The notes under the pieces: generated by a model
What the model saw: the letters and a program-made list of their open reading frames with translations, nothing else
Database searches by the model: none
What the model was told of the DNA's origin: nothing
IMG/VR virus record: IMGVR_UViG_3300008110_000030
Span: 1-64,000 of that record
Strand: one strand, 5' to 3'
Length of the DNA: 64,000 nucleotides
Shown: piece after piece, positions 1 to 59,030 of the stretch
Layout: every line of letters starts with the position of its first letter
Position numbering within the stretch: position 1 is the stretch's first letter
Translations under genes and position numbers: made by a program

Positions 1-40
1 GTTTAGCAAACTGCTGCCTTAACCACTCGGCCAACCTTCC
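1..40 (-). tRNA. tRNA-Ser(GCT), truncated at window edge
   Basis: Reverse complement GGAAGGTTGGCCGAGTGGTTAAGGCAGCAGT-TTGCTAA-AC: D-arm plus anticodon loop GCT. Confidence 0.85.
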
Positions 41-206
41 ATTAGTTGATAGTACTCACCGTCTATGACAACGTGTCTATTTAGGAGTCCTGCGCTAACA
101 GTTCCAAAGCATCTAACAACAGTTATATCAGACTTCGCGCCATGCCAGCGGATGTCGTGTAGTATATGCGTCCATATACGATACCTGTCAAGTGCTATCA
201 ACTAAT
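41..206 (-). ncRNA. Candidate structured RNA closed by a 16-bp stem, filling the spacer between tRNA-Leu and tRNA-Ser
   Basis: 41-56 attagttgatagtact and 191-206 agtgctatcaactaat are inverted repeats (15/16); internal hairpin GTATATG-GACG-CATATAC. Confidence 0.5.
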
Positions 207-289
207 GGTGCCCCAACCGAGACTTGAACTCGGACGCACTAGGCACTGGCTTCTAAGACCAGCGTGTCTACCAATTCCACCATCGGGGC
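206..289 (-). tRNA. tRNA-Leu(TAG)
   Basis: Cloverleaf, CTGGT-CTTAGAA-GCCAG, long variable arm, encoded CCA. Confidence 0.95.
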
Positions 290-305
290 AAAAATTTATT
301 AACAG

Positions 306-317
306 TTTTAAAGAACA
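306..317 (-). promoter_or_regulatory. boxA-like antitermination site
   Basis: TGTTCTTTAAAA on minus strand, ~25 nt downstream of a sigma70 -10 box; identical copy at 1901-1912. Confidence 0.6.
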
Positions 318-341
318 ATCGTTAATTGCTTAACGTGCTAT

Positions 342-370
342 ATTATAGCAAGAGTATTTAACTGTGTCAA
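342..370 (-). promoter_or_regulatory. sigma70 promoter
   Basis: TTGACA-17 nt-TATAAT on minus strand. Confidence 0.85.
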
Positions 371-389
371 CAAACTTGACACAGTAATT

Positions 390-464
390 TGGTACACCGT
401 AGGAGAATCGAACTCCTCTTACCTGCGTGAAAGGCGGGTGTCCTAACCGATAGACGAACGGTGC
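390..464 (-). tRNA. tRNA-Glu(TTC)
   Basis: Cloverleaf, CCCGC-CTTTCAC-GCAGG, CCA. Confidence 0.95.
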
Positions 465-465
465 A

Positions 466-618
466 TTAACTTGCTACAATCTTTGGAATATATGGAACTG
501 CTCTTGGTCCACCATACAGTGACTCAAAAAGTTTTTTAGCTTCTTGCGGAGTATCCGCATAGACTCTTTTCTTTTCTTCACCTTGTGGTGTACGCACAGT
601 TGTTTCATACATTGGCAT
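466..618 (-). CDS. Hypothetical protein, 50 aa (MPMYETTVRT...)
   Basis: AAGGAG RBS before ATG at 618; the longer ORF-track start overlaps tRNA-Asp. Confidence 0.75.
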   Translation of the reverse strand: MPMYETTVRTPQGEEKKRVYADTPQEAKKLFESLYGGPRAVPYIPKIVAS

Positions 619-629
619 ATTTTTCTCCT

Positions 630-704
630 TGGCGGTCTCAACGAGAATCGAACTCGTCCCTACGGCGTGACAGGCCATTATACTAACCGATATACTATGA
701 GACC
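630..704 (-). tRNA. tRNA-Asp(GTC)
   Basis: Cloverleaf, ATGGC-CTGTCAC-GCCGT, GCCA end. Confidence 0.95.
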
Positions 705-779
705 ATTCTGAAACACACTACGACAAATGCTATGCACCCTAACTCTATTTGTCTAGGCTGTGGCAATGTGTTTTAGAAT
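705..779 (-). repeat. ACAC/GTGT-stem element, copy 1
   Basis: Arms ATTCTAAAACACAT / GTGTGTTTCAGAAT; related arms at 3471, 4836 and 4884. Confidence 0.6.
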
Positions 780-780
780 A

Positions 781-1665
781 GTGCTAACGCTGAGATTACA
801 CGTTAGCCATAAGCACCTCTAGCATTATAGTTCGCCTTGCGAGCAAACCTTCTCTAGACATCCACTAGGGTCCTTGCGGATCTCCTAGTCTGCTTACAGC
901 ATCGCCGTTTTTAAAGCCAGGCAGTAGGCTTGTCGTCATGTGCTATTCTGCGGATTCCATTCCGTTGACCTTGCGAGCCATTCAAGTGCGCTAACACCTT
1001 ACGAACCCCCCTCCACAAATTAGTGTCACCTTGCGAGCTTCACTAAACTCAATTAGCTTTCGCCTTGAGTATTAGATACTTTTCACACATGACCGAGGCA
1101 GTCTTTGCTTTTTAATGATAGTTGGATTTGAACCAACTGCCGTCTGTTTAACATACAGATGCTCTACCAAATGAGCTATATCGAACCTACCGCGATGAGC
1201 TGCCTCTGTTGCTCCGTAAACTTTTGATCTACGGAATACAACTCACCACATACCTTTTGCCTCGCGAGCTACTCAGTGATGTTTTGCGATCAATGTAGCA
1301 ACGTTTCACAACGTGCCCCACCAACCACTTACATTGCATACGAGCTCTTAGGAGCGACCCTTCGAACCAATACACTACCCTTTCTCATACCAGCTGACTG
1401 ATTGGTTTCGCATGGAAGTCAGCACCACCTGTTACTTTTCATTGCCCCGTGTTCCTTGCGGCACGTCGAACAATGTTCTTTCCCATACATCAGCTTTGCT
1501 GTTACAACCACCGGTCTTATCAGTGATCGCTTCCTCACGGAAGTGAGCAGGCTTGTTTACATGAACCATTGCTGGCGCTAGTATGTAGGCATTCTAGCTT
1601 TGGGTGTATCGCTACACTTATTCTTTGTAAACGGCAAGCCGCCTACAGGACAATAAACTGCCCTT
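781..1665 (-). ncRNA. Giant structured ncRNA (~885 nt), GOLLD-like
   Basis: No ORF >=60 aa on either strand; many GCAA/GAAA tetraloop hairpins (CTCGCAAGG, CCGCAAGG, GGCGAAAGC); embedded tRNA-like domain; 3' hairpin GCTAACG...CGTTAGC; located in a phage tRNA array. Family name is an inference. Confidence 0.7.
1117..1183 (-). tRNA. tRNA-Asn(GTT)-like domain embedded in the giant ncRNA
   Basis: D-arm GCTC-ATTTGGTA-GAGC, anticodon arm TCTGT-ATGTTAA-ACAGA, T-arm GTTGG-TTCAAAT-CCAAC; no CCA. Confidence 0.7.
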
Positions 1666-1886
1666 AATTTATCATATAAAAGTACAACTGGGTATCAGCT
1701 TATGTTGCAAGACCGTCTCTTGCTATTTCCGCTTCTACATTACAGTCCAGTAAACTCCACCGTGCCATACTTGGGTCCCCCCTCAGCTTTCGTGTACGTT
1801 AACCCGAGCTAGTCCGTCGACTAGTTGTACTCTGTTAACGCTACCTAGTGGTACTGGTAACCTTTTGTACTTTTATATGACAAATT
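1666..1886 (-). ncRNA. Candidate ~180 nt RNA enclosed by a 22-bp stalk
   Basis: 1865-1886 pairs with 1666-1687 over 22 bp (one G-U on the minus strand); internal hairpins CTAGTC-GACG-GACTAG and GCAAGA-GACGG-TCTTGC. Confidence 0.6.
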
Positions 1887-1900
1887 GTCATATACCAACT

Positions 1901-1912
1901 TTTTAAAGAACA
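1901..1912 (-). promoter_or_regulatory. boxA-like antitermination site
   Basis: TGTTCTTTAAAA just downstream of the 1938-1966 promoter. Confidence 0.6.
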
Positions 1913-1937
1913 TTTACTATTTGCTTAGTAAGTATCT

Positions 1938-1966
1938 ATTGTAGCAACAATTTGCGACGTTGTCAA
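1938..1966 (-). promoter_or_regulatory. sigma70 promoter for the ncRNA block
   Basis: TTGACA-17 nt-TACAAT. Confidence 0.8.
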
Positions 1967-2049
1967 CAATAATTTTAAATTAATTCGTTGTATTTTTACA
2001 ACAATTATGAATTACTATCATTTTAACATGCCTGTATACTAGTGAAAAT

Positions 2050-2055
2050 TAAATA
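2050..2055 (+). promoter_or_regulatory. T4-like late promoter box
   Basis: TAAATA 10 nt before the ATG at 2065. Confidence 0.5.
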
Positions 2056-2064
2056 AGTTTTACA

Positions 2065-2658
2065 ATGATAACATCAATTTTCCCAATTAACATTTTGGTC
2101 AAAGACTTTGATATGCAAGACTCTTGGACACAAGATATTATTGGTATAGCTAAAGCAGTTTTCGCTAACGATCAAGCAGAAAAAGGATCAGAATCTGCTA
2201 CTGGCAATAACAGAGTCATTTTCTTTACTGAAGAGAATTTATCAACATTCTCAGCAATAGCAGAACTTAGACAAATGTTTGCAGACTCTTTTTATGAACT
2301 TGCATCATCATATCCTAACAATAAATTAACTAAAGATATACTTGAAGAACGCATTAAAAATAATTCAGGTTATCTAAATTTTATGAAAAAAGGTGAACAT
2401 CAATCAGTGCATACACACGATCCTGAAGTGTTTGCTTTTGGTATATTTTACCTAACTGACATTGACAATCACCAATTTGGTGGCGAACTTGTTTTACATA
2501 ATCCTAGCTTTTCAGGAGCTTGGCATTTCAATCATGGACATACGTATAGTGTTCCTACTAAAAAGAACCGTATGGTAATATGTCCCAACACCATATGGCA
2601 TGAAGTCACTCCGTATTCAGGAGAATCAGACCGTATGGCAATTGTAGTAAATCTTTAA
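2065..2658 (+). CDS. 2OG-Fe(II) oxygenase (phage/TIGR02466-like type)
   Basis: HTHD...FYL...WHEVTPY...R facial-triad pattern; paralogous to 5675, 10995 and 15946. Confidence 0.8.
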   Translation: MITSIFPINILVKDFDMQDSWTQDIIGIAKAVFANDQAEKGSESATGNNRVIFFTEENLSTFSAIAELRQMFADSFYELASSYPNNKLTKDILEERIKNNSGYLNFMKKGEHQSVHTHDPEVFAFGIFYLTDIDNHQFGGELVLHNPSFSGAWHFNHGHTYSVPTKKNRMVICPNTIWHEVTPYSGESDRMAIVVNL

Positions 2659-2659
2659 G

Positions 2660-2736
2660 TGGCGCGGCTGGAGAGATTCGAACTCCCGACCCACGAGGTA
2701 GAAGCTCGTTGCTCTAATCCACTGAGCTACAGCCGC
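2660..2736 (-). tRNA. tRNA-Arg(TCT)
   Basis: Cloverleaf, ACGAG-CTTCTAC-CTCGT, CCA. Confidence 0.95.
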
Positions 2737-2739
2737 ATT

Positions 2740-2824
2740 TGGTACCCCTCCTCGGATTCGAACCGAGAAACCTACGGCACTCCTTTTGAGAGAGCTGACT
2801 TTACCAAAATTTGTCTAGAGGGGC
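2740..2824 (-). tRNA. tRNA-Leu(CAA)
   Basis: GCTCT-CTCAAAA-GGAGT, long variable arm, CCA. Confidence 0.92.
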
Positions 2825-2832
2825 AAATTGAA

Positions 2833-3043
2833 TTTGTAAGTAGTTGCCCCATCGTTATAGCAACCATTCACCCGTGTAACAAGCTCGAGCGGGACTCGGT
2901 ACGTCACTTGGGATTCATCCAGTCTGCCTCCTTTACAGGCCTCCGCCGTTCCCGGCAGGTGGGAGTTGAACCCAAAACCTTCTACTGTACAGTACCTTCG
3001 AAGAATACTGAACAGCGTGACTTCACTTGCTGACACTTACAAA
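2833..3043 (-). ncRNA. Candidate ~210 nt structured RNA with a tRNA-type T-loop
   Basis: 9-bp closing stem TTTGTAAGT/ACTTACAAA; GGG-TTCAACT-CCC T-arm; CAGTA...TACTG hairpin; fills the Thr-Leu spacer. Confidence 0.6.
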
Positions 3044-3046
3044 ACT

Positions 3047-3121
3047 TGGTGCCCCAGGATGGAATCGAACCACCACACCCTGCTTACAAAACAGGACCTC
3101 TACCACTAAGGATACAAGGGC
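3047..3121 (-). tRNA. tRNA-Thr(TGT)
   Basis: CCTGT-TTTGTAA-GCAGG, CCA. Confidence 0.93.
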
Positions 3122-3129
3122 AATAACAT

Positions 3130-3224
3130 TGGCGGAAAGCAGAGGAGTCGAACCCCACCCGGCTCGTCACCAGGACCCAGTTTTCAAGGCTGGTCGGGGA
3201 ACCAACTCCCCTGCATTACTTTCC
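3130..3224 (-). tRNA. tRNA-Ser(TGA), atypical 8/4-type fold
   Basis: CCAGC-CTTGAAA-ACTGG; acceptor GGAAAGTA/TGCTTTCC; 4-bp T-stem; extended D-stem; long variable arm. Confidence 0.85.
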
Positions 3225-3230
3225 ATTATT

Positions 3231-3304
3231 TGGCGTACCTCCAGGGACTCGAACCCCGACGAACAGTTTTGGAGACTGTCATGCTGCCATTACATTAGAG
3301 ATAC
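3231..3304 (-). tRNA. tRNA-Trp(CCA)
   Basis: ACAGT-CTCCAAA-ACTGT, GCCA end. Confidence 0.93.
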
Positions 3305-3309
3305 ATATT

Positions 3310-3387
3310 TGGAGTAGCGGGTGAGATTTGAACTCACGGTTTTTCGGATTTGCAATCCGATGCAATGGGCCGCTCTGCCACCGCTAC
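3310..3387 (-). tRNA. tRNA-Cys(GCA)
   Basis: TCGGA-TTGCAAA-TCCGA, TCCA end. Confidence 0.93.
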
Positions 3388-3394
3388 ATTAATT

Positions 3395-3469
3395 TGGTGG
3401 TAATGAGTGGACTTGAACCACTAACAGTCTCCGTATGAAGGAGGTGGACTACCATTGTCCTACATTACC
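3395..3469 (-). tRNA. tRNA with CAT anticodon (elongator Met or Ile2)
   Basis: CTCC-TTCATAC-GGAG; lacks the initiator GGG/CCC pairs; ACCA end. Confidence 0.85.
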
Positions 3470-3470
3470 A

Positions 3471-3555
3471 TATGGAAGCACACTCATCACTTTTCGCAAC
3501 GGTGGTGTGAAGTCCTTACAACCTAAACTATGTTTAGGCAAAGTGTGCTTTCATA
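3471..3555 (-). repeat. ACAC/GTGT-stem element, copy 2
   Basis: Arms TATGAAAGCACACT / AGTGTGCTTCCATA; fills the Lys-Met spacer. Confidence 0.6.
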
Positions 3556-3630
3556 TGGTAGGGGCACAGAGAATCGAACTCTGATTAATAGGTTAAAAGC
3601 CTACTACTTTAGCCGTTAAGTTATACCCCC
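3556..3630 (-). tRNA. tRNA-Lys(TTT)
   Basis: GTAGG-CTTTTAA-CCTAT, CCA. Confidence 0.93.
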
Positions 3631-3680
3631 GACATCTTATCACTCTTGTCACTTGTCATGACAGATCTCCTTTTTAAAAA

Positions 3681-3758
3681 TGGTCTGTGTGGTAGGATTT
3701 GAACCTACGGCCTCCTCGTTCCAAACAAGGCCGTCTACCGGGCTGACATTACACACAG
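3681..3758 (-). tRNA. tRNA-Pro(TGG)
   Basis: CCTTG-TTTGGAA-CGAGG, C1 start, CCA. Confidence 0.93.
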
Positions 3759-3783
3759 ATAAACTTTATTTCATAAATACAAG

Positions 3784-4026
3784 ATGACACGCTTATATGC
3801 ATATTACTGTATAAAGAAATTTATAATCTTCTTCCCTACACCAGTATTTTTAATACTGTCTTTGTGTAGTATTTTTTACTTTAAGTCGCCAATGTGCGGC
3901 GGCTTTTCATATGAAATGTCACTAATGTGGTTTCTTATGGCACTGGCACATTCAAAGCCTTGGATTGAATATATTGAAATCAAACGCTGTCCTAATGGAT
4001 GCGGTTGTGATTGCAATACTAACTAA
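3784..4026 (+). CDS. Small membrane protein with Cys-rich C-terminus
   Basis: Two hydrophobic segments, tail CPNGCGCDC; TAAATA at 3774-3779. Confidence 0.65.
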   Translation: MTRLYAYYCIKKFIIFFPTPVFLILSLCSIFYFKSPMCGGFSYEMSLMWFLMALAHSKPWIEYIEIKRCPNGCGCDCNTN

Positions 4027-4028
4027 CT

Positions 4029-4102
4029 TGGCAGAGGGTACTGGGATCGAACCAGTGATGACAGAGTCAAAGTCTGTAGTGTTACCGCTACACTAACCCC
4101 CA
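4029..4102 (-). tRNA. tRNA-Gln(TTG)
   Basis: ACAGA-CTTTGAC-TCTGT, GCCA end. Confidence 0.93.
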
Positions 4103-4111
4103 ACAAAAACT

Positions 4112-4187
4112 TGGTGCTACCTAGAGGAATCGAACCTCTTTCAACGGTGCTTCAAACCGCCGCTATGACCACATCAGCTAAAGTAGC
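4112..4187 (-). tRNA. tRNA-Phe(GAA)
   Basis: GCGGT-TTGAAGC-ACCGT, CCA. Confidence 0.9.
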
Positions 4188-4189
4188 AT

Positions 4190-4263
4190 TGGGGTGAAGT
4201 GGGGAATCGAACCCTCTCTTACTGTTTCACAGACAGCAGTGCAACCACTACACTAACAACACC
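4190..4263 (-). tRNA. tRNA-His(GTG)
   Basis: GCTGT-CTGTGAA-ACAGT; G-1:C73; two T-T mismatches in acceptor stem. Confidence 0.88.
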
Positions 4264-4269
4264 ATTGTT

Positions 4270-4346
4270 TGGCCGGCCCGGAGAGACTCGAACTCCCAAC
4301 CTCTAGTTTCGAAGACTAGCACTCTAATCCATTGAGTTACGGACCG
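4270..4346 (-). tRNA. tRNA-Arg(TCG)
   Basis: CTAGT-CTTCGAA-ACTAG, GCCA end. Confidence 0.92.
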
Positions 4347-4353
4347 ATAAATT

Positions 4354-4427
4354 TGGTACCTCCACCGGGTAACGATCCCAGGACTGCCGGTTATCAGCCG
4401 ACTGTTATTCCATTTAACTACAGAGGT
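4354..4427 (-). tRNA. tRNA-Ile(GAT) with atypical T-loop
   Basis: GTCGG-CTGATAA-CCGGC; T-loop ATCGTTA; CCA. Confidence 0.85.
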
Positions 4428-4503
4428 AAATTGCTAAGGGACACATTCTAATGTTGTTTGAGACTGAGCTGGGGGTCTGTGTTCAGCAAGTCTCCCATTT
4501 AAT

Positions 4504-4581
4504 TGGCTGTCCGACTAGGGATCGAACCTAGCTCATTCTTCGTTAACAGCGAAGCGCCTACACCATGCTTGCTCTCGGACA
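4504..4581 (-). tRNA. tRNA-Asn(GTT)
   Basis: CTTCG-CTGTTAA-CGAAG, GCCA end. Confidence 0.92.
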
Positions 4582-4588
4582 ATAAAAC

Positions 4589-4663
4589 TGGCGCCGTGGA
4601 CGGGGATCGAACCCGCCTTAATTGGATAGACAATCCAGTGCCCTCCCAGAGGACTACCACGGC
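4589..4663 (-). tRNA. tRNA-Asp(GTC)-like, atypical second copy
   Basis: TGGA-TTGTCTA-TCCA with T37; unusual D-loop; GCCA end. Confidence 0.75.
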
Positions 4664-4667
4664 ATAT

Positions 4668-4743
4668 TGGTATCGCGGACGGGAATCGAACCCGCCTAGT
4701 CACCTTGAAAGGGTGATGACCTAACCCAGAAGTCCACCGCGAT
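4668..4743 (-). tRNA. tRNA-Glu(TTC), second divergent copy
   Basis: TCACC-CTTTCAA-GGTGA, CCA. Confidence 0.9.
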
Positions 4744-4749
4744 GTAATT

Positions 4750-4834
4750 TGGTGGAGTATCCTGGGATCGAACCAGGCGTACCCGAAGGTGGCGGATTTA
4801 CAGTCCACTGCATCACCATTGATGCTTCTACTCC
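4750..4834 (-). tRNA. tRNA-Tyr(GTA)
   Basis: GTGGA-CTGTAAA-TCCGC, long variable arm, ACCA end. Confidence 0.93.
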
Positions 4835-4835
4835 A

Positions 4836-4889
4836 TTAAACACACTGTCTGCGACATTTCAGTCCATACCAGCTCAATGTGTGTATTAA
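4836..4889 (-). repeat. ACAC/GTGT-stem element, copy 3
   Basis: Arms TTAATACACAC / GTGTGTTTAA. Confidence 0.5.
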
Positions 4890-4947
4890 AACATACTAAT
4901 TTACTCTGCACGGCAAATGACTGGCGTTCAAAAAGTATGCTTTAATA
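4884..4947 (-). repeat. ACAC/GTGT-stem element, copy 4 (variant)
   Basis: Arms TATTAAAGCATACT / AGTATGTTTTAATA, 14 bp with one G-U on the minus strand. Confidence 0.55.
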
Positions 4948-4956
4948 CGAACTAAT

Positions 4957-5055
4957 TTTTCCTCCCACACAAGGGATTCCATCCTAGCCGCCGCCCGTTT
5001 GCCCCATGTTTTAAGTGCGGAGCCAGGACCTCGTTTCCTGTATATTCACACTTTG
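4957..5055 (-). ncRNA. Candidate pseudoknotted RNA
   Basis: AAGTGTG/CGCACTT stem, nested CAGG/CCTG, possible GCTCC/GGGGC pairing, TCCC/GGGA hairpin; GC-rich island. Confidence 0.45.
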
Positions 5056-5060
5056 TACTA

Positions 5061-5234
5061 TTAGTCTACACTAAACGTTGGTGCTTTCGCTAACGCTTCG
5101 TGATACTTTCTAGCACGATCGAACTTATCTTGAATAAGTTTTTGAAGTTGTTCTTTAGACATTTCTCCAAGAACAGCTTCATAAGCCTGTTCAACAACAC
5201 GTTCATTTAATTTTGCGTAATCTATCTTTTCCAT
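5061..5234 (-). CDS. Hypothetical helical protein, 57 aa (MEKIDYAKLN...)
   Basis: Translated by hand; AAAGGA RBS; below the ORF-track size cutoff. Confidence 0.7.
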   Translation of the reverse strand: MEKIDYAKLNERVVEQAYEAVLGEMSKEQLQKLIQDKFDRARKYHEALAKAPTFSVD

Positions 5235-5250
5235 TTTTCCTTTCCAAAAA

Positions 5251-5283
5251 CAAAAAACCCTAGGGTTTTTAATCCTAGGGTCC
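5251..5283 (-). terminator. Intrinsic terminator, probable attenuator
   Basis: ACCCTAGG-loop-CCTAGGGT followed by TTTTT. Confidence 0.75.
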
Positions 5284-5314
5284 TTGAAGTTTTGAAATGT
5301 TTCTAAGTTGTTAC

Positions 5315-5461
5315 TTAGTCATCCCAGCCCTCCTGGACCCTGGTAATCTCTGATGTGCGATCATATCCTAGACTCATATTAATCGCAGACCAATAGGCTG
5401 GCAGAAAGCCGCCTACCTGGGGTTTGCAATTATGTTGTCTAAAATTCGATTGCGTTTGCAT
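5315..5461 (-). CDS. Candidate leader peptide (MQTQSNF...QEGWDD)
   Basis: Stop codon lies 32 nt before the terminator; could also start at GTG 5503. Confidence 0.45.
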   Translation of the reverse strand: MQTQSNFRQHNCKPQVGGFLPAYWSAINMSLGYDRTSEITRVQEGWDD

Positions 5462-5521
5462 TTTGATTACCGTCTTAACCTTTTGTTTAAAATTTACACA
5501 CACTTTTAAGTGTATGTTCTA

Positions 5522-5550
5522 ATTGTACATTTTATTTAGTCTTTTGTCAA
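5522..5550 (-). promoter_or_regulatory. sigma70 promoter with an embedded TAAATA late box
   Basis: TTGACA-17 nt-TACAAT; TAAATA at 5533-5538. Confidence 0.75.
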
Positions 5551-5618
5551 CCACTCATTTGTCTTTTGACAAAAACATTTATGACAATTAACAATGATTA
5601 CTTCTACAACTTGTCTCT

Positions 5619-5647
5619 ATTGTATAGCACTTACTTGCAGTTGTCAA
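5619..5647 (-). promoter_or_regulatory. sigma70 promoter (tandem upstream promoter)
   Basis: TTGACA-17 nt-TACAAT. Confidence 0.75.
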
Positions 5648-5674
5648 GAACTTTTTTGTTGTATTTTTACAACA

Positions 5675-6268
5675 CTAGTCGTCTAACAACAAATTGAAGT
5701 CAACTGGGATCGCTAGACGAAATCTGTCATAGTAAGGGGTTACCCAATGATACAGAAAGCAAGGAAAAACTAGTAGGTCACCTGAGTTTGGTTGGTACTC
5801 AATAGACCTAAACATTGGTTGAATTTCTTGTGGATAGCCTCTATTGGCATTCACTCTAGGGTCATCAAAAACTATTGCCCCACCGTCTGCTTGATTGTCT
5901 GCTAATAGATAAAATACTGCTGATATGTGTGATCCAGAATGATTGTGTGTATTCATGTAGTATCCCTTTGAATATCCGGCAATCCAGCCACGAATACTAC
6001 TACCAGGATAATCTTTAATATCTAGTTTAAAAACTTCTTTTAAATATCTTGAAAATGCTGGAATCACCACGTCGTCTTTAAATTTTTGGATAATTTTGGA
6101 ATCAGTATCAAAAATGTTTTCTTGTCGAATATCACTAGGTGGATTTTCTAAATCATACATTGAAAATAACTCATTAATAACATTGCCCAATAATTCTTGA
6201 TCTTTGATTGTATCTTTAATTACAGTCGTAGGCCAAAGAGAATTAATTCCTTCATTTATCAAGATCAA
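5675..6268 (-). CDS. 2OG-Fe(II) oxygenase (TIGR02466-like)
   Basis: HNHSGSHISAVFYL...DPR...HWVTPY...R. Confidence 0.8.
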   Translation of the reverse strand: MILINEGINSLWPTTVIKDTIKDQELLGNVINELFSMYDLENPPSDIRQENIFDTDSKIIQKFKDDVVIPAFSRYLKEVFKLDIKDYPGSSIRGWIAGYSKGYYMNTHNHSGSHISAVFYLLADNQADGGAIVFDDPRVNANRGYPQEIQPMFRSIEYQPNSGDLLVFPCFLYHWVTPYYDRFRLAIPVDFNLLLDD

Positions 6269-39561: not shown

Positions 39562-41451
39562 ATGTCAAAGATCATCGGTATCGACCTCGGTACAACAAAC
39601 TCATGCGTAGCCGTTATAGAAAACGGAATCCCCAAAGTTATTGAAAATAGTGAAGGTGCTAGAACTACACCCTCAATTGTTGCCTACGCCAACAATGAAA
39701 TCTTAGTAGGTGCTACTGCAAAACGTCAAGCAGTAACAAATCCTAAAAATACAATCTATGCTAGTAAGCGTTTGATTGGACGTAAGTTTGAAGAACAAGC
39801 TGTACAAAAAGATATTGACCTAATGCCTTACAAAATTGTTCGAGCAGACAATGGTGATGCATGGATTGAAGCTAACAACGACAAACTTGCCCCACCACAG
39901 ATTTCGGCAGAAGTACTCCGCAAGATGAAAAAAACTGCGGAAGACTATCTTGGAGAAACTGTAACACAGGCAGTTATTACAGTCCCAGCTTACTTTAACG
40001 ACAGTCAACGTCAAGCAACAAAAGATGCAGGCAAAATTGCTGGCTTAGAAGTTCTACGTATTATTAATGAACCAACAGCGGCTGCACTTAGTTATGGTGT
40101 TGACAAAGCTGATAAAGCTGACAGGAAAATTGCTGTTTACGACCTTGGTGGTGGTACATTTGACGTAAGCATTATTGACATTGCTGATGTTGATGGTGAC
40201 AAGCAAATTGAAGTGTTATCAACCAACGGTGACACATTCTTAGGCGGTGAAGATTTTGACCAACGTATTATGGATTACTTGGTTGACGAATTTAAGAAAG
40301 AGCAAGGTGTTGATCTAAAGAAAGACATGTTGGCTCTACAACGTCTTAAAGAAGCAAGTGAAAAAGCTAAAATTGAATTATCAAGTTCAGCACAAACAGA
40401 TGTTAACTTGCCATACATTACAGCAGATGCAAGTGGTCCTAAACACATGGCAATTAAGTTGACTCGTGCTAAATTTGAATCAATGGTTGATGACCTAATT
40501 CAACGCAGTTTAGATCCATGCCGTCAAGCTATGAAAGATGCTAGTGTTACTGCCGCAGACATTGACGAAGTTATCTTGGTTGGTGGTCAAACACGTATGC
40601 CTAAGGTACAAGAAGAAGTTGAAAAACTTTTTGGTAAAGCTCCACGTCGTGATGTAAATCCGGACGAAGCTGTAGCAGTTGGTGCGGCAATTCAAGGTGC
40701 TGTTTTAGGTGGTGATCGTAAAGATGTTCTACTACTTGACGTTACTCCATTAAGTCTTGGTATTGAAACACTGGGCGGCGTAATGACCAAGATCATCCAG
40801 AAGAATACAACTATTCCTTCTAAAGGACAGCAAACATTCTCAACAGCTGAAGATAACCAGCCTGCGGTTACTATTAAAGTATTCCAAGGTGAGCGTGAAC
40901 TTTGCCAGCATAATAAAATGTTGGGAGAGTTTAATCTTGAAGGCATTGCTCCAGCTCGTCGTGGTCAGCCACAGATTGAAGTTACCTTTGACATTGACGC
41001 TAACGGCATCATGAACATTAGTGCTAAGGACAAGTCAACTGGAAAAGAAAACAAGATTACTATCAAATCAGATAGCGGTCTTAGCAAAGAAGAAATTGAA
41101 AAAATGATTCAAGAAGCTGAAGCAAATGCCGAAGCAGATAAAAAAGCACGTGAACTAATTGATTCTCGCAACAACGCAGAATCACAAGTACACTCTGTTA
41201 AGAAAGACTTAACAGAGTATGGTAGTAAAATCACTGAAGATGACAAGTCTAAAATAGAAACTGCTATTAAAACTGTAGAAGATTCTATTAAGGGCGACGA
41301 CACTGAAGTGATTACTAAATCAGTGACAGCATTGTTTGAAGCAATGACACCACTGATTCAAGCAAAGACTAGTACTGCTTCAGAAAGCAACAACAATAAT
41401 CAAGACGATGTTGTTGATGCTCAATACACTGAAACACCTAAGTCTGAATAA
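39562..41451 (+). CDS. dnaK: DnaK (Hsp70)
   Basis: [28 protein letters not shown]; full length. Confidence 0.98.
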
Positions 41452-55818: not shown

Positions 55819-55893
55819 CTGGCGATAGTTCAACGGATAGAACAGTAGCCTTCTAAGCTATTAATCCAGGTTCGATTCCTGGTCGCCGGACCA
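55819..55893 (+). tRNA. tRNA-Arg(TCT)
   Basis: GTAGC-CTTCTAA-GCTAT, CCA; TAAATA at 55807-55812. Confidence 0.93.
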
Positions 55894-55910
55894 CTTTTAG
55901 AAAGTTTGAA

Positions 55911-56744
55911 ATGAAAATCAATCTAGTCAGCGACATGCACATCAACTTCCAGGACATTAATTTGCCAGGCGGTGATGTACTCATTATGGCTGGGGATATC
56001 ATGGAAGCTGGTCACCTACGTTTGGCTGACAATGCTAAACAAAATACATTTATTGCTGATAGATATCGTAGATTCATCAATGAAGAATTGTGCAAGTATC
56101 GTCATGTGATTTATATTGCAGGCAATCATGAGCACTATAGCAACAGCTATGACGACACACATATTCGAATAGGTCGTGAACTGCCAGACAACGTACACTT
56201 CTTAGAAGCAGAATCAATCAAGATTGATGACGTGTGGTTCTTTGGTGGCACATTTTGGACTGATATGAACAAAGGCGATCCTATCACTGCCAGTGTGCTT
56301 AAACAACGCATGGCTGATTTTAGTGGTTCAATTAAATTTGGTAACAGTATCAAAGTTGATACCGCTTGGGGAGACAGTTATTACACTAGTAAGTTCACTC
56401 CTGCTTATGCTAAAGGCGTGTTTCACGAAACAATGGAAAAATTAAAAACTTTTTTAGAAGCTCATCCTGATGAAAAAGTTGTTGTAGTAAGTCATCACGC
56501 ACCAACTGAGTTGAGTGTTAATGAATATTACAAAAATGAATTTCATATGAATGGTGGATATCACAGCAGACTAGGTGATTTTATTTTAGACCATCCCAAC
56601 ATTAAGGTATGGTGTCATGGTCACATGCACGATCCAGTTGACTACACTATTGGAACTACTCGTGTACTGAGTAACCCACGTGGTTACAAAGGATATGAAC
56701 ACCAAGCTGAAGTGTTTGATCCTAATTTTAGTTTTGACGTATAA
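55911..56744 (+). CDS. Calcineurin-like metallophosphoesterase
   Basis: SDMH, AGD, GNHE, SHHAP, HGHMH. Confidence 0.92.
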   Translation: MKINLVSDMHINFQDINLPGGDVLIMAGDIMEAGHLRLADNAKQNTFIADRYRRFINEELCKYRHVIYIAGNHEHYSNSYDDTHIRIGRELPDNVHFLEAESIKIDDVWFFGGTFWTDMNKGDPITASVLKQRMADFSGSIKFGNSIKVDTAWGDSYYTSKFTPAYAKGVFHETMEKLKTFLEAHPDEKVVVVSHHAPTELSVNEYYKNEFHMNGGYHSRLGDFILDHPNIKVWCHGHMHDPVDYTIGTTRVLSNPRGYKGYEHQAEVFDPNFSFDV

Positions 56745-56755
56745 AGGCAACAGAC

Positions 56756-57385
56756 ATGGGATTTGTTACTGACGGAGATTTATCTAAAATATTTGGACGT
56801 ATTGACAAAAAACTGTCTGTTGTTCATGACAAGGACAAGTCTTTAGTTGAAATACTTGATCTTGATATCGCTAGCGGGCCTTGGCTTGCTGGCGGTGCTG
56901 TACTTACTTGGCTTAGTGGTAACCCAGTTGGCGACAGTGACTTTGATATATTTTTCAAAGATTTGCGACAGTTTGATGAAGTGTTTGGCAGACTCATGCG
57001 CAACCATGCTAGTATCATCTACACCAGTGAAAACGCATTGACCTTGCATCTTGTTATTGATGACGATCTCAAACGAATCCAATTGATTCGAAAAAATTAT
57101 TTTGATTCTGCAAAAGATGTAATTGATCATTTTGACTTTACTATTTGTCAACTGGTAACTGATGGCTACCAAATAGTTGGTGCTGACCACACATTTGAAC
57201 ATATAAAAGAAAAACGAATTGTATCTGTTGGACCTGCCAAACGATCTATTGTAAAAAGAATTGTCAAATATGTTAGTTATGGATACACTGTTGATTGTGA
57301 TTTAATGCAATCAATTCTCGACAATCCTGAAGAGTATGATTGGTCATTTAATAACATAGATGAAAATTATGAAAACGCATTCTAA
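56756..57385 (+). CDS. Nucleotidyltransferase (poly(A) polymerase/CCA head-domain-like)
   Basis: WLAGGAV...DSDFDIFF; FDFTIC. Confidence 0.78.
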   Translation: MGFVTDGDLSKIFGRIDKKLSVVHDKDKSLVEILDLDIASGPWLAGGAVLTWLSGNPVGDSDFDIFFKDLRQFDEVFGRLMRNHASIIYTSENALTLHLVIDDDLKRIQLIRKNYFDSAKDVIDHFDFTICQLVTDGYQIVGADHTFEHIKEKRIVSVGPAKRSIVKRIVKYVSYGYTVDCDLMQSILDNPEEYDWSFNNIDENYENAF

Positions 57386-57752
57386 TTACCACAGTTGGAG
57401 TTTGCTAGATCCACGTCCAGTATTTTATCTAGACGAAAAGACACATACTGAATTGTGCGTATGGAATGGCATTTACATGACCAAAAAACAAGCTCTGCTG
57501 ATTGCTTGTGAAAAGTATTTGTCAATTTGGCCCACCCCAACGATGAAAAATCGTAGTTATCAAGAGTTTATTACTGCATATTTTAGTAATGCATTTGGTC
57601 ACAGAGAGTGGGACGGCATTATTTCTAAACTAAACAACGGACAAGATCATTACAATCTTTTGGTAAAAATGCTAAAACCTCATACACAAAAGATGGCAAC
57701 ATACTCTGGTCCAGAGGTTTTATCTTGGTTCAATCTTCATAAACAAAAATAG
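57360..57752 (+). CDS. Hypothetical protein
   Basis: Packed ORF. Confidence 0.6.
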   Translation: MKIMKTHSNYHSWSLLDPRPVFYLDEKTHTELCVWNGIYMTKKQALLIACEKYLSIWPTPTMKNRSYQEFITAYFSNAFGHREWDGIISKLNNGQDHYNLLVKMLKPHTQKMATYSGPEVLSWFNLHKQK

Positions 57753-57760
57753 ACTATATT

Positions 57761-57979
57761 ATGACTCGTTATACAGCAGAAGTTAAATACGACAAAGAGA
57801 CAGACGAACACTACTTGCAATTTGATCCAGAAGTTCTATCTCAAATGGGTTGGGACTTTGGCGATACCATAATTTGGAAGGATAATAATGATGGGTCATT
57901 CACGCTTACGAAAAAAGTGGATAACCACCCCAGTGACCAGACTTCAAATGTTCCAACTGATGGAGCCTCTGAAGAGTAA
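57761..57979 (+). CDS. AbrB/MazE-like DNA-binding protein
   Basis: LQFDPEVLSQMGWDFGDTIIW. Confidence 0.65.
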   Translation: MTRYTAEVKYDKETDEHYLQFDPEVLSQMGWDFGDTIIWKDNNDGSFTLTKKVDNHPSDQTSNVPTDGASEE

Positions 57980-58574
57980 ACTAATTGGTTTTCCTTTGTA
58001 TAAAGGAGAAATTAGTTCTATAATTGGTGAATTGATTAGTAGTAAATTTAGAGCAGATATTATACAAGCTGAAGCAAGTCAAGTAGACATTGGCGATTTA
58101 AATGTAAGTGCTTGTTATGATCCAGAATTGGATAGTATGGATCGTCCTTGTATTGAAATTGTACTAGTTTATAATCCTTACGATAATTTTTTAATTTTTG
58201 ATCAAGAATTATTTTCCACAATAACCAAAAGACTTTGTGATGCTCTATCACATGAGCAAATTCATCAACAACAGCACAGAGCAAGATTTTGGGAAGATGT
58301 AGACTATGATGATCCAGATGATGATGAAGCATATTTGGCTAACAAAGATGAGATTGATGCTTATAGTCACAACATTGCTAACGAACTTTTGGACTTTGCA
58401 GACCTAAATCAGGTATTGACATTAATACAATATCCAAGTAAAATAAAGATTGAACACAGCGTAAACCTTTGGGTTTACATGCAGACATTTAACAACGATA
58501 CAAATCATCCAGTAATCAAAAGATTACTAAAAAAAGTTACAAAAATACTACCTAAGGTAGTTTTACAAAGATAA
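57948..58574 (+). CDS. Hypothetical protein with HExxH motif
   Basis: SHEQIHQQQ...Y....DEIDAY; start uncertain. Confidence 0.65.
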   Translation: MFQLMEPLKSKLIGFPLYKGEISSIIGELISSKFRADIIQAEASQVDIGDLNVSACYDPELDSMDRPCIEIVLVYNPYDNFLIFDQELFSTITKRLCDALSHEQIHQQQHRARFWEDVDYDDPDDDEAYLANKDEIDAYSHNIANELLDFADLNQVLTLIQYPSKIKIEHSVNLWVYMQTFNNDTNHPVIKRLLKKVTKILPKVVLQR

Positions 58575-58691
58575 ATAGAGTACTATGAAGACAACAGCAT
58601 ATCAATTTGCATCCAGTAAGAAGATTCCTTCTTCAGTTGTCTACTTGTCTTTAATCCCACGAATACGATTACAACACTCTTAAAAAGTTAA

Positions 58692-58792
58692 GGGAGTGTT
58701 GCTAATATTGGCCTAAGGGCAGAGCTTATACCTCTGTAAGCACCGTCTAGATAAGGCGGCGAATGTGGGTTCGATTCCCGCCACTCCTACCA
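58692..58792 (+). tRNA. tRNA-Ile(TAT) with very long variable arm
   Basis: CAGAG-CTTATAC-CTCTG; extra arm CCGTCT/AGGCGG; acceptor GGGAGTG/CACTCCT; CCA. Confidence 0.82.
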
Positions 58793-58798
58793 AAAATT

Positions 58799-58883
58799 GC
58801 CTGCATGGTGAAATCGGTAAACACAGCAGACTTAAAATCTGCCGGAGAAATCCTTCCCAGTTCGATTCTGGGTGCAGGCACCA
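58799..58883 (+). tRNA. tRNA-Leu(TAA)
   Basis: GCAGA-CTTAAAA-TCTGC, CCA. Confidence 0.93.
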
Positions 58884-58893
58884 AAATACATAG

Positions 58894-58922
58894 TTGACAA
58901 AAATAACAAACACATATATAAT
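58894..58922 (+). promoter_or_regulatory. sigma70 promoter
   Basis: TTGACA-17 nt-TATAAT. Confidence 0.85.
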
Positions 58923-58945
58923 ATAGAACACTTTACAAGGACATT

Positions 58946-59030
58946 GCGACTGTGGTGAAATAGGTAGACACAAGAGACTTAAAATCTCTCGCCCACAGGC
59001 ATCCCGGTTCGATTCCGGGCAGTCGCACCA
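58946..59030 (+). tRNA. tRNA-Leu(TAA), second copy
   Basis: AGAGA-CTTAAAA-TCTCT, CCA. Confidence 0.93.

What the first reader, a model, noticed from the sequence alone, without database searches (positions are those of the whole stretch)
781..1665. ~885 nt GOLLD-like giant RNA with a tRNA-Asn-like domain inserted in one arm
Seen: ORF-free, packed with GNRA tetraloop hairpins, and a GAGGCAG/CTGCCTC helix (1200-1206 with 1095-1101) encloses a complete D/anticodon/T-arm tRNA-like module lacking CCA. Known: GOLLD RNAs are large phage-associated RNAs near tRNA genes, sometimes with embedded tRNAs, and have no established function. Inference: a GOLLD member, or a new relative, with its own promoter and boxA.
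Basis: partly seen in the sequence, partly recalled or inferred. Interest (0 to 1): 0.75.

Follow-up and report, generated by a model that had tools for sequence, protein, structure and literature searches.

The report
GOLLD RNA with built-in tRNA mimic
This is a real, highly expressed member of the known GOLLD family of giant phage RNAs, and the "tRNA" inside it is a conserved tRNA-shaped domain that cannot be a working tRNA, so it is a good example of a known kind, not a new one.

Summary
Window 783-1668, minus strand, is a full-length GOLLD RNA of about 885 nt. The Rfam GOLLD model matches 787-1249 end to end at 213.5 bits (cut-off 150). ROOL does not match.

The upstream 420 nt form a structured 5' domain: 108 predicted pairs, 74 with compensatory changes across 30 relatives.

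It closes the GOLLD linker, which holds a tRNA-shaped module at 1185-1113. That module has D, anticodon and T arms but only a 4-bp acceptor stub and no CCA. The phage's other tRNAs have full acceptor stems and 21 of 22 encode CCA. In relatives the wobble base takes all four letters.

Three river metatranscriptomes hold the RNA at word depths of 43-1335, against 0 on neighbouring genes. One contig spans the whole module and both flanks.

A sigma-70-like promoter and a boxA-like element lie upstream, separated from GOLLD by another conserved structured RNA.

Verdict: a new member of a known family in a freshwater jumbo phage. Embedded tRNAs in GOLLD linkers are already described. Function remains unknown. 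I infer a cage-forming RNA that displays a non-decoding tRNA mimic.

The parts
1938..1966 (-). Sigma-70-like promoter (TTGACA, 17-nt spacer, TACAAT, with TG extension). It is the likely start of the RNA operon.
   Evidence: 11 of 12 matches. It is conserved in L163, L125 and L156.
1901..1911 (-). boxA-like element GTTCTTTAAAA, about 27 nt downstream of the -10 hexamer.
   Evidence: there are only 2 matches in 64 kb (0.29 expected by chance). The other match, at 306-316, lies the same distance below the second strong promoter at 370-342. It is conserved in relatives. The resemblance to E. coli rrn boxA is from my own knowledge.
1665..1892 (-). Separate conserved structured RNA (model R1), closed by a 21-bp A/U-rich helix (1887-1868 with 1689-1670) that ends just before GOLLD. 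I infer the helix is an RNase III-type processing stem.
   Evidence: Fold z-score -5.1. Ten homologues, with 21 of 65 pairs compensatory. R1 scores 217 bits here. In L155 the module lies 1.5 kb from GOLLD, so it is an independent module. RNA depth is about 8, against hundreds for GOLLD. No Rfam family matches.
1250..1668 (-). GOLLD 5' domain (not covered by the Rfam model).
   Evidence: Thirty-sequence alignment A1. RNAalifold predicts 108 pairs, 74 of them with compensatory changes. 97.8% of cells are paired, against 34-43% for slid partners and 80% for shuffles; 0 of 300 shuffles reach the observed values.
787..1249 (-). GOLLD 3' domain (Rfam RF02032, model positions 1-416). The terminal hairpin stem runs on to about 783.
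   Evidence: 213.5 bits, cut-off 150. Covarying helices are recovered independently in 51 relatives.
1192..1249 (-). First hairpin of the 3' domain. Its outer helix is GGUGAG (1247-1242) with CUCAUC (1199-1194), and its 3' internal loop carries GAGGCAG.
   Evidence: (33/33 paired).
1200..1206 (-). 5' strand (GAGGCAG) of the helix that closes the linker.
1095..1101 (-). 3' strand (CUGCCUC) of the helix that closes the linker.
1113..1185 (-). tRNA-shaped module in the GOLLD linker. It has D, anticodon (loop AUGUUAA, GUU) and T arms, a 4-bp acceptor stub, no CCA, and A at the discriminator position.
   Evidence: It stays contiguous with both flanks in RNA contigs covering 976-1264.
630..704 (-). 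tRNA-Asp, 78 nt downstream. It is probably co-transcribed, since no terminator is predicted in between.

Best explanation
Window 783-1668 (minus strand) encodes a full-length GOLLD RNA of a freshwater jumbo phage.

Shown:
- It is a family member by covariance model.
- It has the bipartite family architecture, and both halves are held by compensatory base-pair changes.
- It accumulates as an abundant RNA in river metatranscriptomes.
- Its linker carries a conserved tRNA-shaped module that stays covalently joined to the rest of the RNA.

Inferred:
- It is transcribed from the promoter at 1966-1938 as part of a long untranslated operon: boxA-like element, a 228-nt structured RNA, GOLLD, then tRNA-Asp and further genes.
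- The boxA-like element protects that operon against Rho termination.
- The RNA is trimmed out at the 21-bp stem just upstream (RNase III type) and by tRNA processing downstream.

By analogy with the solved relatives (env-38, a 14-mer; S. agalactiae, a 12-mer), the RNA self-assembles into an RNA-only cage. In that cage the linker, and so the tRNA-shaped module, points into the interior.

The module is not a decoding tRNA. It lacks acceptor pairs 1-3, CCA and the Asn discriminator. It keeps the elbow and the anticodon loop (U33, U35, U36, A37, A38) while the wobble base drifts.

My best guess is that it is a displayed tRNA mimic, many copies per cage, that binds or titrates a tRNA-recognising factor during infection. 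What the cage does beyond this is unknown for the whole family.
For: Family membership: RF02032 scores 213.5 bits over model positions 1-416. Eight tested relatives score 185-225 bits.

5' domain: 108 pairs, 74 with compensatory changes, 97.8% paired, and 0 of 300 shuffles reach the observed values.

3' domain and linker helix: 25 covarying helices are recovered in 51 relatives. The linker helix occurs in at least 12 compensated versions.

The module is conserved in place: ARAGORN calls a tRNA at the same position in 39 of 51 relatives. The D, anticodon and T stems and the 4-bp stub all covary.

The module is not a working tRNA:
- Only 1 of 32 relatives could form a 7-bp acceptor stem, and 20 of 32 have no pair beyond the stub.
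- None has CCA, whereas 21 of the phage's other 22 tRNAs encode CCA with 6-7 of 7 acceptor pairs.
- A canonical tRNA-Asn with G73 exists at 4504-4581.
- Position 34 is G14/U9/C6/A1 among close relatives, while 33 and 35-38 are fixed in 28-29 of the 30 relatives that keep the module (33 aligned, 3 without it).

Expression: word depth is 43-1335 over 801-1660 in three river metatranscriptomes. It is 0 over the ORFs at 2065-2658 and beyond 5400, and 3-8 in a DNA run. A 289-nt contig (976-1264, no mismatch, depth 199-284) spans the module and both flanks in all three RNA runs.

Operon layout.

Cage, interior linker and embedded tRNAs in the family: PMC12286853 and PMC12990946.
Against: Cage formation was not tested for this sequence. 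Oligomer number differs between solved GOLLDs, and I did not map the published intermolecular contacts onto this RNA.

Covariation cannot tell whether the 1206-1200/1101-1095 helix forms within one chain or between chains.

Logan contigs report presence and mean depth only, so partial cleavage at the module borders is not excluded. The runs were also chosen because they hold this sequence.

Three relatives (L124, L208, L195) have a short linker with no module, and three more have a degraded module. The module is therefore dispensable for the GOLLD fold, and perhaps for its function.

No binding partner is known, so the mimic or titration role is a guess. The boxA and RNase III roles rest on sequence resemblance and geometry alone.
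Confidence: 0.7

Rival explanations
1. The embedded module is a true tRNA-Asn gene. It is stored inside the GOLLD cage and later released by RNase P and RNase Z, given CCA and charged. This is the 'inhibited storage' or covalently linked cargo idea from the literature.
For: It scores as a tRNA (53.5 bits; ARAGORN). The anticodon loop CUNUUAA is what real Asn and Lys tRNAs carry, and it is conserved. The idea is proposed for other GOLLDs (PMC12286853 and PMC12990946).
Against: The acceptor stem has only 4 bp here and in 31 of 32 close relatives. There is no CCA, although 21 of the phage's 22 other tRNAs encode it. The discriminator is A, whereas the phage's canonical tRNA-Asn has G73. A34 variants and non-standard anticodon loops occur in relatives. 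The module is contiguous with its flanks in abundant RNA. In Mycobacterium, no expression of the embedded pseudo-tRNA was detected (PMC6582537).
Confidence: 0.1
2. The GOLLD RNA is mainly a processing or spacer element of a tRNA operon. It would be a large structured leader that organises maturation of the neighbouring tRNAs, with no function of its own after processing.
For: It lies inside a tRNA array. It shares a promoter and boxA-like element with tRNAs. No terminator is predicted after it.
Against: It accumulates far above the neighbouring tRNAs and spacers in RNA libraries. About 880 nt of structure with invariant loops over covarying stems is conserved across more than 50 phages. In Sinorhizobium phage Phosso it appears to be a stand-alone unit with its own terminator and no annotated or ARAGORN-detected tRNA gene nearby. 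Solved relatives form ordered cages.
Confidence: 0.08
3. The tRNA-shaped module is a decaying relic of a tRNA captured by the linker, and it has no present function.
For: Some relatives have lost or degraded it. The anticodon differs widely among distant relatives. The acceptor stem is eroded.
Against: The D, anticodon and T stems keep pairing through many compensatory changes: 5 of 5 anticodon-stem pairs and 4 of 4 D-stem pairs show double changes. The T loop, and loop positions 33 and 35-38, are nearly invariant. This pattern indicates purifying selection on the fold, not decay.
Confidence: 0.1

Closest known systems
GOLLD RNA (Rfam RF02032), for example env-38 GOLLD (833 nt, cryo-EM 14-mer cage; PMC12286853)
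   Same: Full-length covariance-model match. A conserved 3' domain plus a separate structured 5' domain of about 420 nt. A variable linker follows the first hairpin of the 3' domain. Phage origin, next to tRNA genes. About 880 nt in all.
   Different: The linker here holds a 73-nt tRNA-shaped module in place of env-38's 42-nt disordered linker. Oligomeric state was not tested. The host is an uncultivated freshwater jumbo phage.
Mycobacterium / Mycolicibacterium GOLLD within tRNA arrays, with an embedded pseudo-tRNA or tRNA-Phe (PMC6582537; Morgado 2020 as cited in PMC12990946)
   Same: GOLLD lies inside a large tRNA array. A tRNA-like element lies inside the GOLLD. The embedded element is judged not to be expressed as a tRNA.
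   Different: The anticodon class differs (Asn/Lys-type NUU here). Here the module is shown to be conserved across dozens of phages, with a 4-bp acceptor stub and a free wobble base. Those are bacterial chromosomal arrays and this is a phage genome.
Sinorhizobium phage Phosso (PV764938), unannotated GOLLD
   Same: 186.6-bit GOLLD hit. The same linker-closing helix in a compensated form (GAGACAG/CUGUCUC). An acceptor-less tRNA-shaped module at the same place.
   Different: It appears to be a stand-alone unit with its own terminator, not inside a tRNA array. The loop reads UCU. It is a cultured phage, so it is a usable test system.
ROOL RNA (the other phage-associated cage-forming giant RNA)
   Same: Phage-associated, near tRNA islands, and forms cages with an interior linker (PMC12286853).
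   Different: No match to the ROOL model anywhere in the window. The sequence and fold are unrelated.
rRNA-operon leader logic (promoter, boxA antitermination site, long RNase III processing stem); from my own knowledge
   Same: The order promoter, boxA-like element, long perfect stem, then a large stable untranslated RNA followed by tRNAs.
   Different: The stem encloses a separate 180-nt RNA and not GOLLD itself. No factor binding or cleavage has been shown.

Membership tests
GOLLD (RF02032) | Covariance-model score at or above the curated gathering score, over the whole model | tested here: met
   213.5 bits against 150, model positions 1-416 of 416, E 5.6e-59.
GOLLD (RF02032) | Conserved multi-helix 3' domain supported by covariation | tested here: met
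   An independent covariation scan of 51 relatives recovers the 3'-domain helices with many double-sided changes.
GOLLD (RF02032) | A separate, more variable, structured 5' domain of about 400 nt, giving a total above 800 nt | tested here: met
   The domain spans 1250-1668. It has 108 pairs, 74 compensatory, 97.8% paired, and no shuffle reaches the observed values. I did not align this 5' domain to the published P1-P13 scheme.
GOLLD (RF02032) | A variable linker after the first 3'-domain hairpin, which in some members holds a tRNA | tested here: met
   The linker lies between 1193 and 1102. The module is at 1185-1113. The same position holds it in 39 of 51 relatives.
GOLLD (RF02032) | Encoded by phages or prophages, usually next to tRNA genes | tested here: met
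   214.6-kb viral contig. About 20 tRNA genes lie within 5 kb. Phage-type genes are present.
GOLLD (RF02032) | Self-assembly into an RNA-only homo-oligomeric cage | not testable with these tools
   This is known for env-38 (14-mer) and S. agalactiae (12-mer) only.
ROOL | Match to the Rfam ROOL covariance model | tested here: not met
   No ROOL hit at the gathering threshold over 64 kb, nor at E up to 1 over window 1-6000.
Canonical tRNA (decoding tRNA-Asn) | D, anticodon and T arms with the conserved T loop and D-loop GG | tested here: met
   RF00005 scores 53.5 bits. The stems covary and the T loop UUCRAnU is conserved.
Canonical tRNA (decoding tRNA-Asn) | Seven-base-pair acceptor stem | tested here: not met
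   Only 4 of 7 pairs form (U-U, U-U and C-A at 1-72, 2-71 and 3-70). The phage's other tRNAs show 6-7 of 7, apart from one mis-registered tRNA-His call. Only 1 of 32 relatives can form 7 pairs.
Canonical tRNA (decoding tRNA-Asn) | A 3' CCA end (encoded in this phage's tRNA genes) and the Asn discriminator G73 | tested here: not met
   No CCA, and A at position 73. Of the 22 other tRNAs, 21 encode CCA. The tRNA-Asn at 4504-4581 has G73. The role of G73 in Asn identity is from my own knowledge.
rrn-type boxA antitermination site | A boxA consensus just downstream of a promoter that drives a long untranslated RNA | tested here: inconclusive
   GTTCTTTAAAA occurs twice in 64 kb, each time about 27 nt below a strong promoter, and is conserved in relatives. 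The match to the consensus is partial and is judged from memory. Binding of NusB/NusE was not tested.

The most novel reading that the evidence does not exclude
The cage displays a dozen or more acceptor-less tRNA mimics whose anticodon loop is held at U33, U35, U36, A37, A38, the loop shared by tRNA-Asn and tRNA-Lys. The mimics would act as a decoy or sponge for a host factor that attacks or reads tRNA anticodon loops, such as an anticodon nuclease of an anti-phage defence system. On this reading, at least this clade of GOLLD would be a counter-defence device that complements the phage's own tRNA array. The free wobble base and the switches to other anticodons in distant relatives would then reflect different targets.
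Probability: 0.1. Interest if true: 0.8.

Novelty: new member of a known kind. Interest (0 to 1): 0.35.

Why it matters
GOLLD is one of the few natural RNAs known to build protein-free cages, and its function is still unknown. This locus does not change what GOLLD is. It adds three things that make the open question easier to test:

1. A clade of more than 50 phage GOLLDs in which the linker 'tRNA' is clearly a conserved, non-chargeable tRNA mimic. This argues against the idea that the cage stores a usable tRNA.
2. Environmental RNA evidence that the RNA is very abundant and that the mimic stays attached.
3. A cultured relative, Sinorhizobium phage Phosso, that carries the same design and could be used for genetics.

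Tried and rejected
- ROOL or a new family: rejected, because the hit is a full-length GOLLD hit and there is no ROOL hit.
- The 260 nt between the promoter and GOLLD as an extended GOLLD 5' domain: rejected. It is a separate module that lies 1.5 kb from GOLLD in L155, and homology of close relatives to GOLLD starts at about 1668-1690.
- The module as a recent copy of the phage's own tRNA-Asn: rejected. It is 67% identical, no closer than to unrelated tRNAs at 65-70%.
- Hairpin loop UACUGCCU (926-919) as an alternative or kissing partner of GAGGCAG: not supported. The loop stays constant while 1206-1200 and 1101-1095 covary with each other.
I only note invariant loops over covarying stems, for example UUAGCG at about 993-988.
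- The 840-nt ORF-free stretch 4835-5674 as a second giant RNA: rejected. Its conserved core is a promoter-to-terminator unit of about 270 nt with no covariation.
- Weinberg 2009 and Morgado 2020 could not be read because they are not held.
- A typed dot-bracket string for the count of structure pairs was avoided. The same controls were run in a script instead.

Full report
**What is there.** The window is the first 64 kb of a 214,617-bp viral contig that CheckV puts at 61% complete, so it comes from a jumbo phage. Positions 1-4850 hold about 20 tRNA genes on the minus strand. It has no ORF of 60 aa or more.

**Family test.** Scanning all of Rfam 15 over the window gives one non-tRNA hit. GOLLD (RF02032) matches 787-1249 on the minus strand at 213.5 bits against a gathering score of 150, with E 5.6e-59, covering model positions 1-416 of 416. 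The result repeats on the whole contig, where it is the only copy. No ROOL hit appears, even at E up to 1 over window 1-6000. The Rfam model covers only the conserved 3' domain of GOLLD. In the solved env-38 RNA the 5' region is residues 1-420 and the 3' region 421-833 (PMC12286853). A 5' domain of about 420 nt was therefore expected upstream, ending near 1670.

**Relatives.** Two pattern scans of IMG/VR brought in about 240 loci. An nhmmer search with window 1970-781 matched 91 of them. Close relatives match from about 1670-1690 down to about 782. After removing duplicates, 50 full-length relatives remained, 51 sequences with the window. Eight that I tested all pass the GOLLD gathering score at 185-225 bits, and the seven metagenomic ones lie among tRNA genes. 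One relative is in a cultured phage, Sinorhizobium phage Phosso (469 kb). Its GOLLD sits in an unannotated 1-kb gap.

**5' domain.**
- A 30-sequence alignment of window 1690-1240 shows conservation starting at AAGGGCAG, near 1668.
- RNAalifold predicts 108 pairs, and 74 of them have at least one compensatory double change.
- In my own control, 97.8% of cells form standard pairs. The figure is 34-43% when 3' partners are slid by 1-3 columns and 80% when they are shuffled.
- None of 300 shuffles reaches the observed percentage, the number of pairs with double changes (74 against 45 +/- 3) or the number of pair types.
- The 5' half is therefore a real structured RNA domain.

**The helix and the linker.**
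- GAGGCAG (1206-1200) lies in the 3' internal loop of the first hairpin of the 3' domain. That hairpin's outer helix, GGUGAG/CUCAUC, is paired in 33/33 relatives.
- CUGCCUC (1101-1095) follows the linker.
- The two strands are paired in 33/33 close relatives at six positions and 32/33 at the seventh. Compensatory changes occur at four positions.
- A blind covariation scan of 51 relatives recovers this helix among 25 helices.
- Reading the strands out gives at least 12 compensated versions, such as GAGUCAG/CUGACUC, GUGGCAG/CUGCCAC, GGAGCAG/CUGCUCC and GAAAUAG/CUAUUUC.
- The helix is therefore real and is part of the family architecture that closes the variable linker.
- GOLLD is a homo-oligomer, and a covariation-predicted pairing in it turned out to be intermolecular. 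Covariation alone therefore cannot say whether this helix forms in cis or in trans.

**The tRNA-shaped module.**
- ARAGORN calls tRNA-Asn (GTT) at 1113-1185. Rfam tRNA matches only model positions 4-67.
- Acceptor positions 1-72, 2-71 and 3-70 are U-U, U-U and C-A, so only a 4-bp stub forms. There is no CCA, and the discriminator is A.
- As a control, 21 of the 22 other tRNAs in the window have 6-7 of 7 acceptor pairs and an encoded CCA. A canonical tRNA-Asn with G73 sits at 4504-4581.
- The module is no closer to that tRNA-Asn (67% identity) than to unrelated tRNAs.
- ARAGORN finds a tRNA at the same place in 39 of 51 relatives. The anticodons are Asn GTT, Lys TTT/CTT and Asn ATT. In more distant members they are Arg, Thr, Gln, Gly, CTA, Glu, Met, Leu and Ile, and some loops are non-standard.
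- In the 33-sequence linker alignment, the D stem, T stem and 4-bp stub pair in 26-32 of 33 with compensatory changes. The blind 51-sequence scan adds the anticodon stem, with double changes at all 5 pairs. The T loop is conserved. Anticodon-loop positions 33 and 35-38 are fixed in 28-29 of the 30 sequences that keep the module, while position 34 is G14/U9/C6/A1.
- Counted without alignment gaps, only 1 of 32 relatives could extend the stub to 7 pairs, and 20 have no extra pair.
- Three relatives have a short linker with no module, and three have a degraded one.
- Phosso's GOLLD has the same design with a UCU loop and a 3-bp stub, read by eye. ARAGORN does not call it.
- The module is thus a conserved tRNA-shaped domain under selection for its fold and most of its anticodon loop. 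It is not a chargeable tRNA.

**Expression.**
- Twenty public runs hold at least 57% of the sampled words of 781-1690, among them a dozen riverine metatranscriptomes.
- I laid three of those RNA runs and one DNA run on window 1-6000.
- In the RNA runs, word depth is 43-1335 over 801-1600 and 85-118 in the 1601-1800 bin. It is at most 10 over the flanking tRNAs and 0 over the ORF at 2065-2658 and beyond 5400. The DNA run is flat at 3-8 over the RNA.
- A 289-nt contig (976-1264, no mismatch, depth 199-284) is present in all three RNA runs. It spans the module and both junctions, so the module is present in RNA joined to its flanks.
- Contigs run into sequencing adapter at 1658 in two runs and at 818 in one run. 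Upstream of about 1660, depth falls to 8 or less.
- Limits: Logan contigs give presence and mean depth only. The runs were found with this sequence. Several related strains are summed. Partial cleavage cannot be excluded.

**Transcription unit.**
- The two best sigma-70-like sites in 1-5200 are on the minus strand, at 1966-1938 (11 of 12 matches, TG extension) and 370-342 (12 of 12).
- GTTCTTTAAAA occurs only twice in the 64 kb, against 0.29 expected. Each copy lies about 27 nt downstream of one of these promoters. The promoter and the motif are conserved in relatives.
- From my own knowledge, the motif resembles the rrn boxA.
- Between this leader and GOLLD lies a separate 228-nt structured RNA (1892-1665), closed by a 21-bp helix. 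Its fold z-score is -5.1. It has ten homologues, with 21 of 65 pairs compensatory, and no Rfam family. In L155 it lies 1.5 kb away from GOLLD.
- No terminator is predicted between GOLLD and tRNA-Asp.
- I infer a polycistronic RNA operon. GOLLD would be released at the long stem upstream (an RNase III-type substrate) and by tRNA processing downstream. None of these processing steps is shown.

**How it most likely works.** The literature shows that GOLLD RNAs form RNA-only cages: a 14-mer for env-38 and a 12-mer for full-length S. agalactiae GOLLD. The 5' domains form the caps, the 3' domains form the ring, and the linker lies in the interior. tRNAs are sometimes found in the linker. Two ideas are on record: covalently linked tRNA cargo, and 'inhibited storage' of the embedded tRNA. 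No function is known, and I found no later functional study in the held library. My evidence places this RNA firmly in the family and argues against storage of a usable tRNA in this clade. I commit to a cage that displays a non-decoding tRNA mimic inside. Its most likely use is to bind or titrate a factor that recognises the tRNA elbow or anticodon loop. This last step is inference.

**Novelty and score.** This is a new member, and a well-populated phage clade, of a known family with a known feature. A specialist would not be surprised by it. The acceptor-less, wobble-free mimic, the strong environmental expression and the cultured relative are useful but incremental. Interest 0.35.

Noticed in passing
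window 1665-1892 (-): A conserved ~228-nt structured RNA lies between the promoter/boxA leader and GOLLD, closed by a 21-bp A/U-rich helix. It has ten IMG/VR homologues (21 of 65 pairs compensatory) and more distant hits in L177 and L169. In most relatives it directly follows a tRNA ...CACCA end. It has no Rfam family and is only weakly represented in RNA (depth about 8). It is a candidate new RNA family of phage tRNA islands.
   Followed up: partly
window 2825-3046 (-): A 222-nt ORF-free gap between tRNA-Leu and tRNA-Thr is conserved in 19 related loci and is structured (28 of 48 predicted pairs have compensatory changes). It contains a T-arm-like hairpin, GGGUUCAACUCCC. An RNA contig at 2885-3019 has depth 62.7 in one metatranscriptome. 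It has no Rfam family.
   Followed up: partly
window 5235-5585 (-): A conserved promoter (GGTTGACA ... TACAAT), about 270 variable nt and a conserved intrinsic terminator are shared with 11 relatives. There is no covariation inside, so it is a small gene or an sRNA, not a second giant RNA.
   Followed up: partly
window 306-316 and 1901-1911 (-): The boxA-like GTTCTTTAAAA occurs only twice in 64 kb. Each copy lies about 27 nt downstream of one of the two strongest sigma-70-like promoters, both of which drive untranslated RNA or tRNA units.
   Followed up: partly
window 206-4743 and 55819-59030: Of the 22 ordinary tRNA genes, 21 encode their 3' CCA. ARAGORN's tRNA-His call shows no CCA and looks mis-registered. 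Rfam finds further tRNA-like hits that ARAGORN misses, at 4753-4834 (33.4 bits) and 3134-3224 (tRNA-Sec model, 38 bits, below its cut-off).
   Followed up: no
window 2065-2658 (+) and 5675-6268 (-): Two 197-aa paralogues of the phage 2OG-Fe(II) oxygenase family (phrog_81) bracket the tRNA/GOLLD island in opposite orientations.
   Followed up: no
window 466-618 (-): A 50-codon ORF with a strong AAGGAG ribosome-binding site sits between tRNA-Asp and tRNA-Glu inside the RNA operon. It is conserved at the DNA level in L226 and L160.
   Followed up: no
window 919-926 (-): The hairpin loop UACUGCCU is nearly invariant among close relatives. It could pair with GAGGCAG (1206-1200) but does not covary with it. 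Its partner is unknown and may be an intermolecular contact.
   Followed up: partly
window 39562-41451 (+): A full-length DnaK/Hsp70 homologue is present. It is 51-59% identical to copies in 630-735-kb uncultured phages, and up to 69% identical to copies in other records, several of which look bacterial.
   Followed up: no
L239 3860-4800 (Sinorhizobium phage Phosso, PV764938): An unannotated GOLLD (186.6 bits) lies in a cultured 469-kb phage. It appears to be a stand-alone unit with its own terminator and carries an acceptor-less tRNA-shaped module with a UCU loop.
   Followed up: partly
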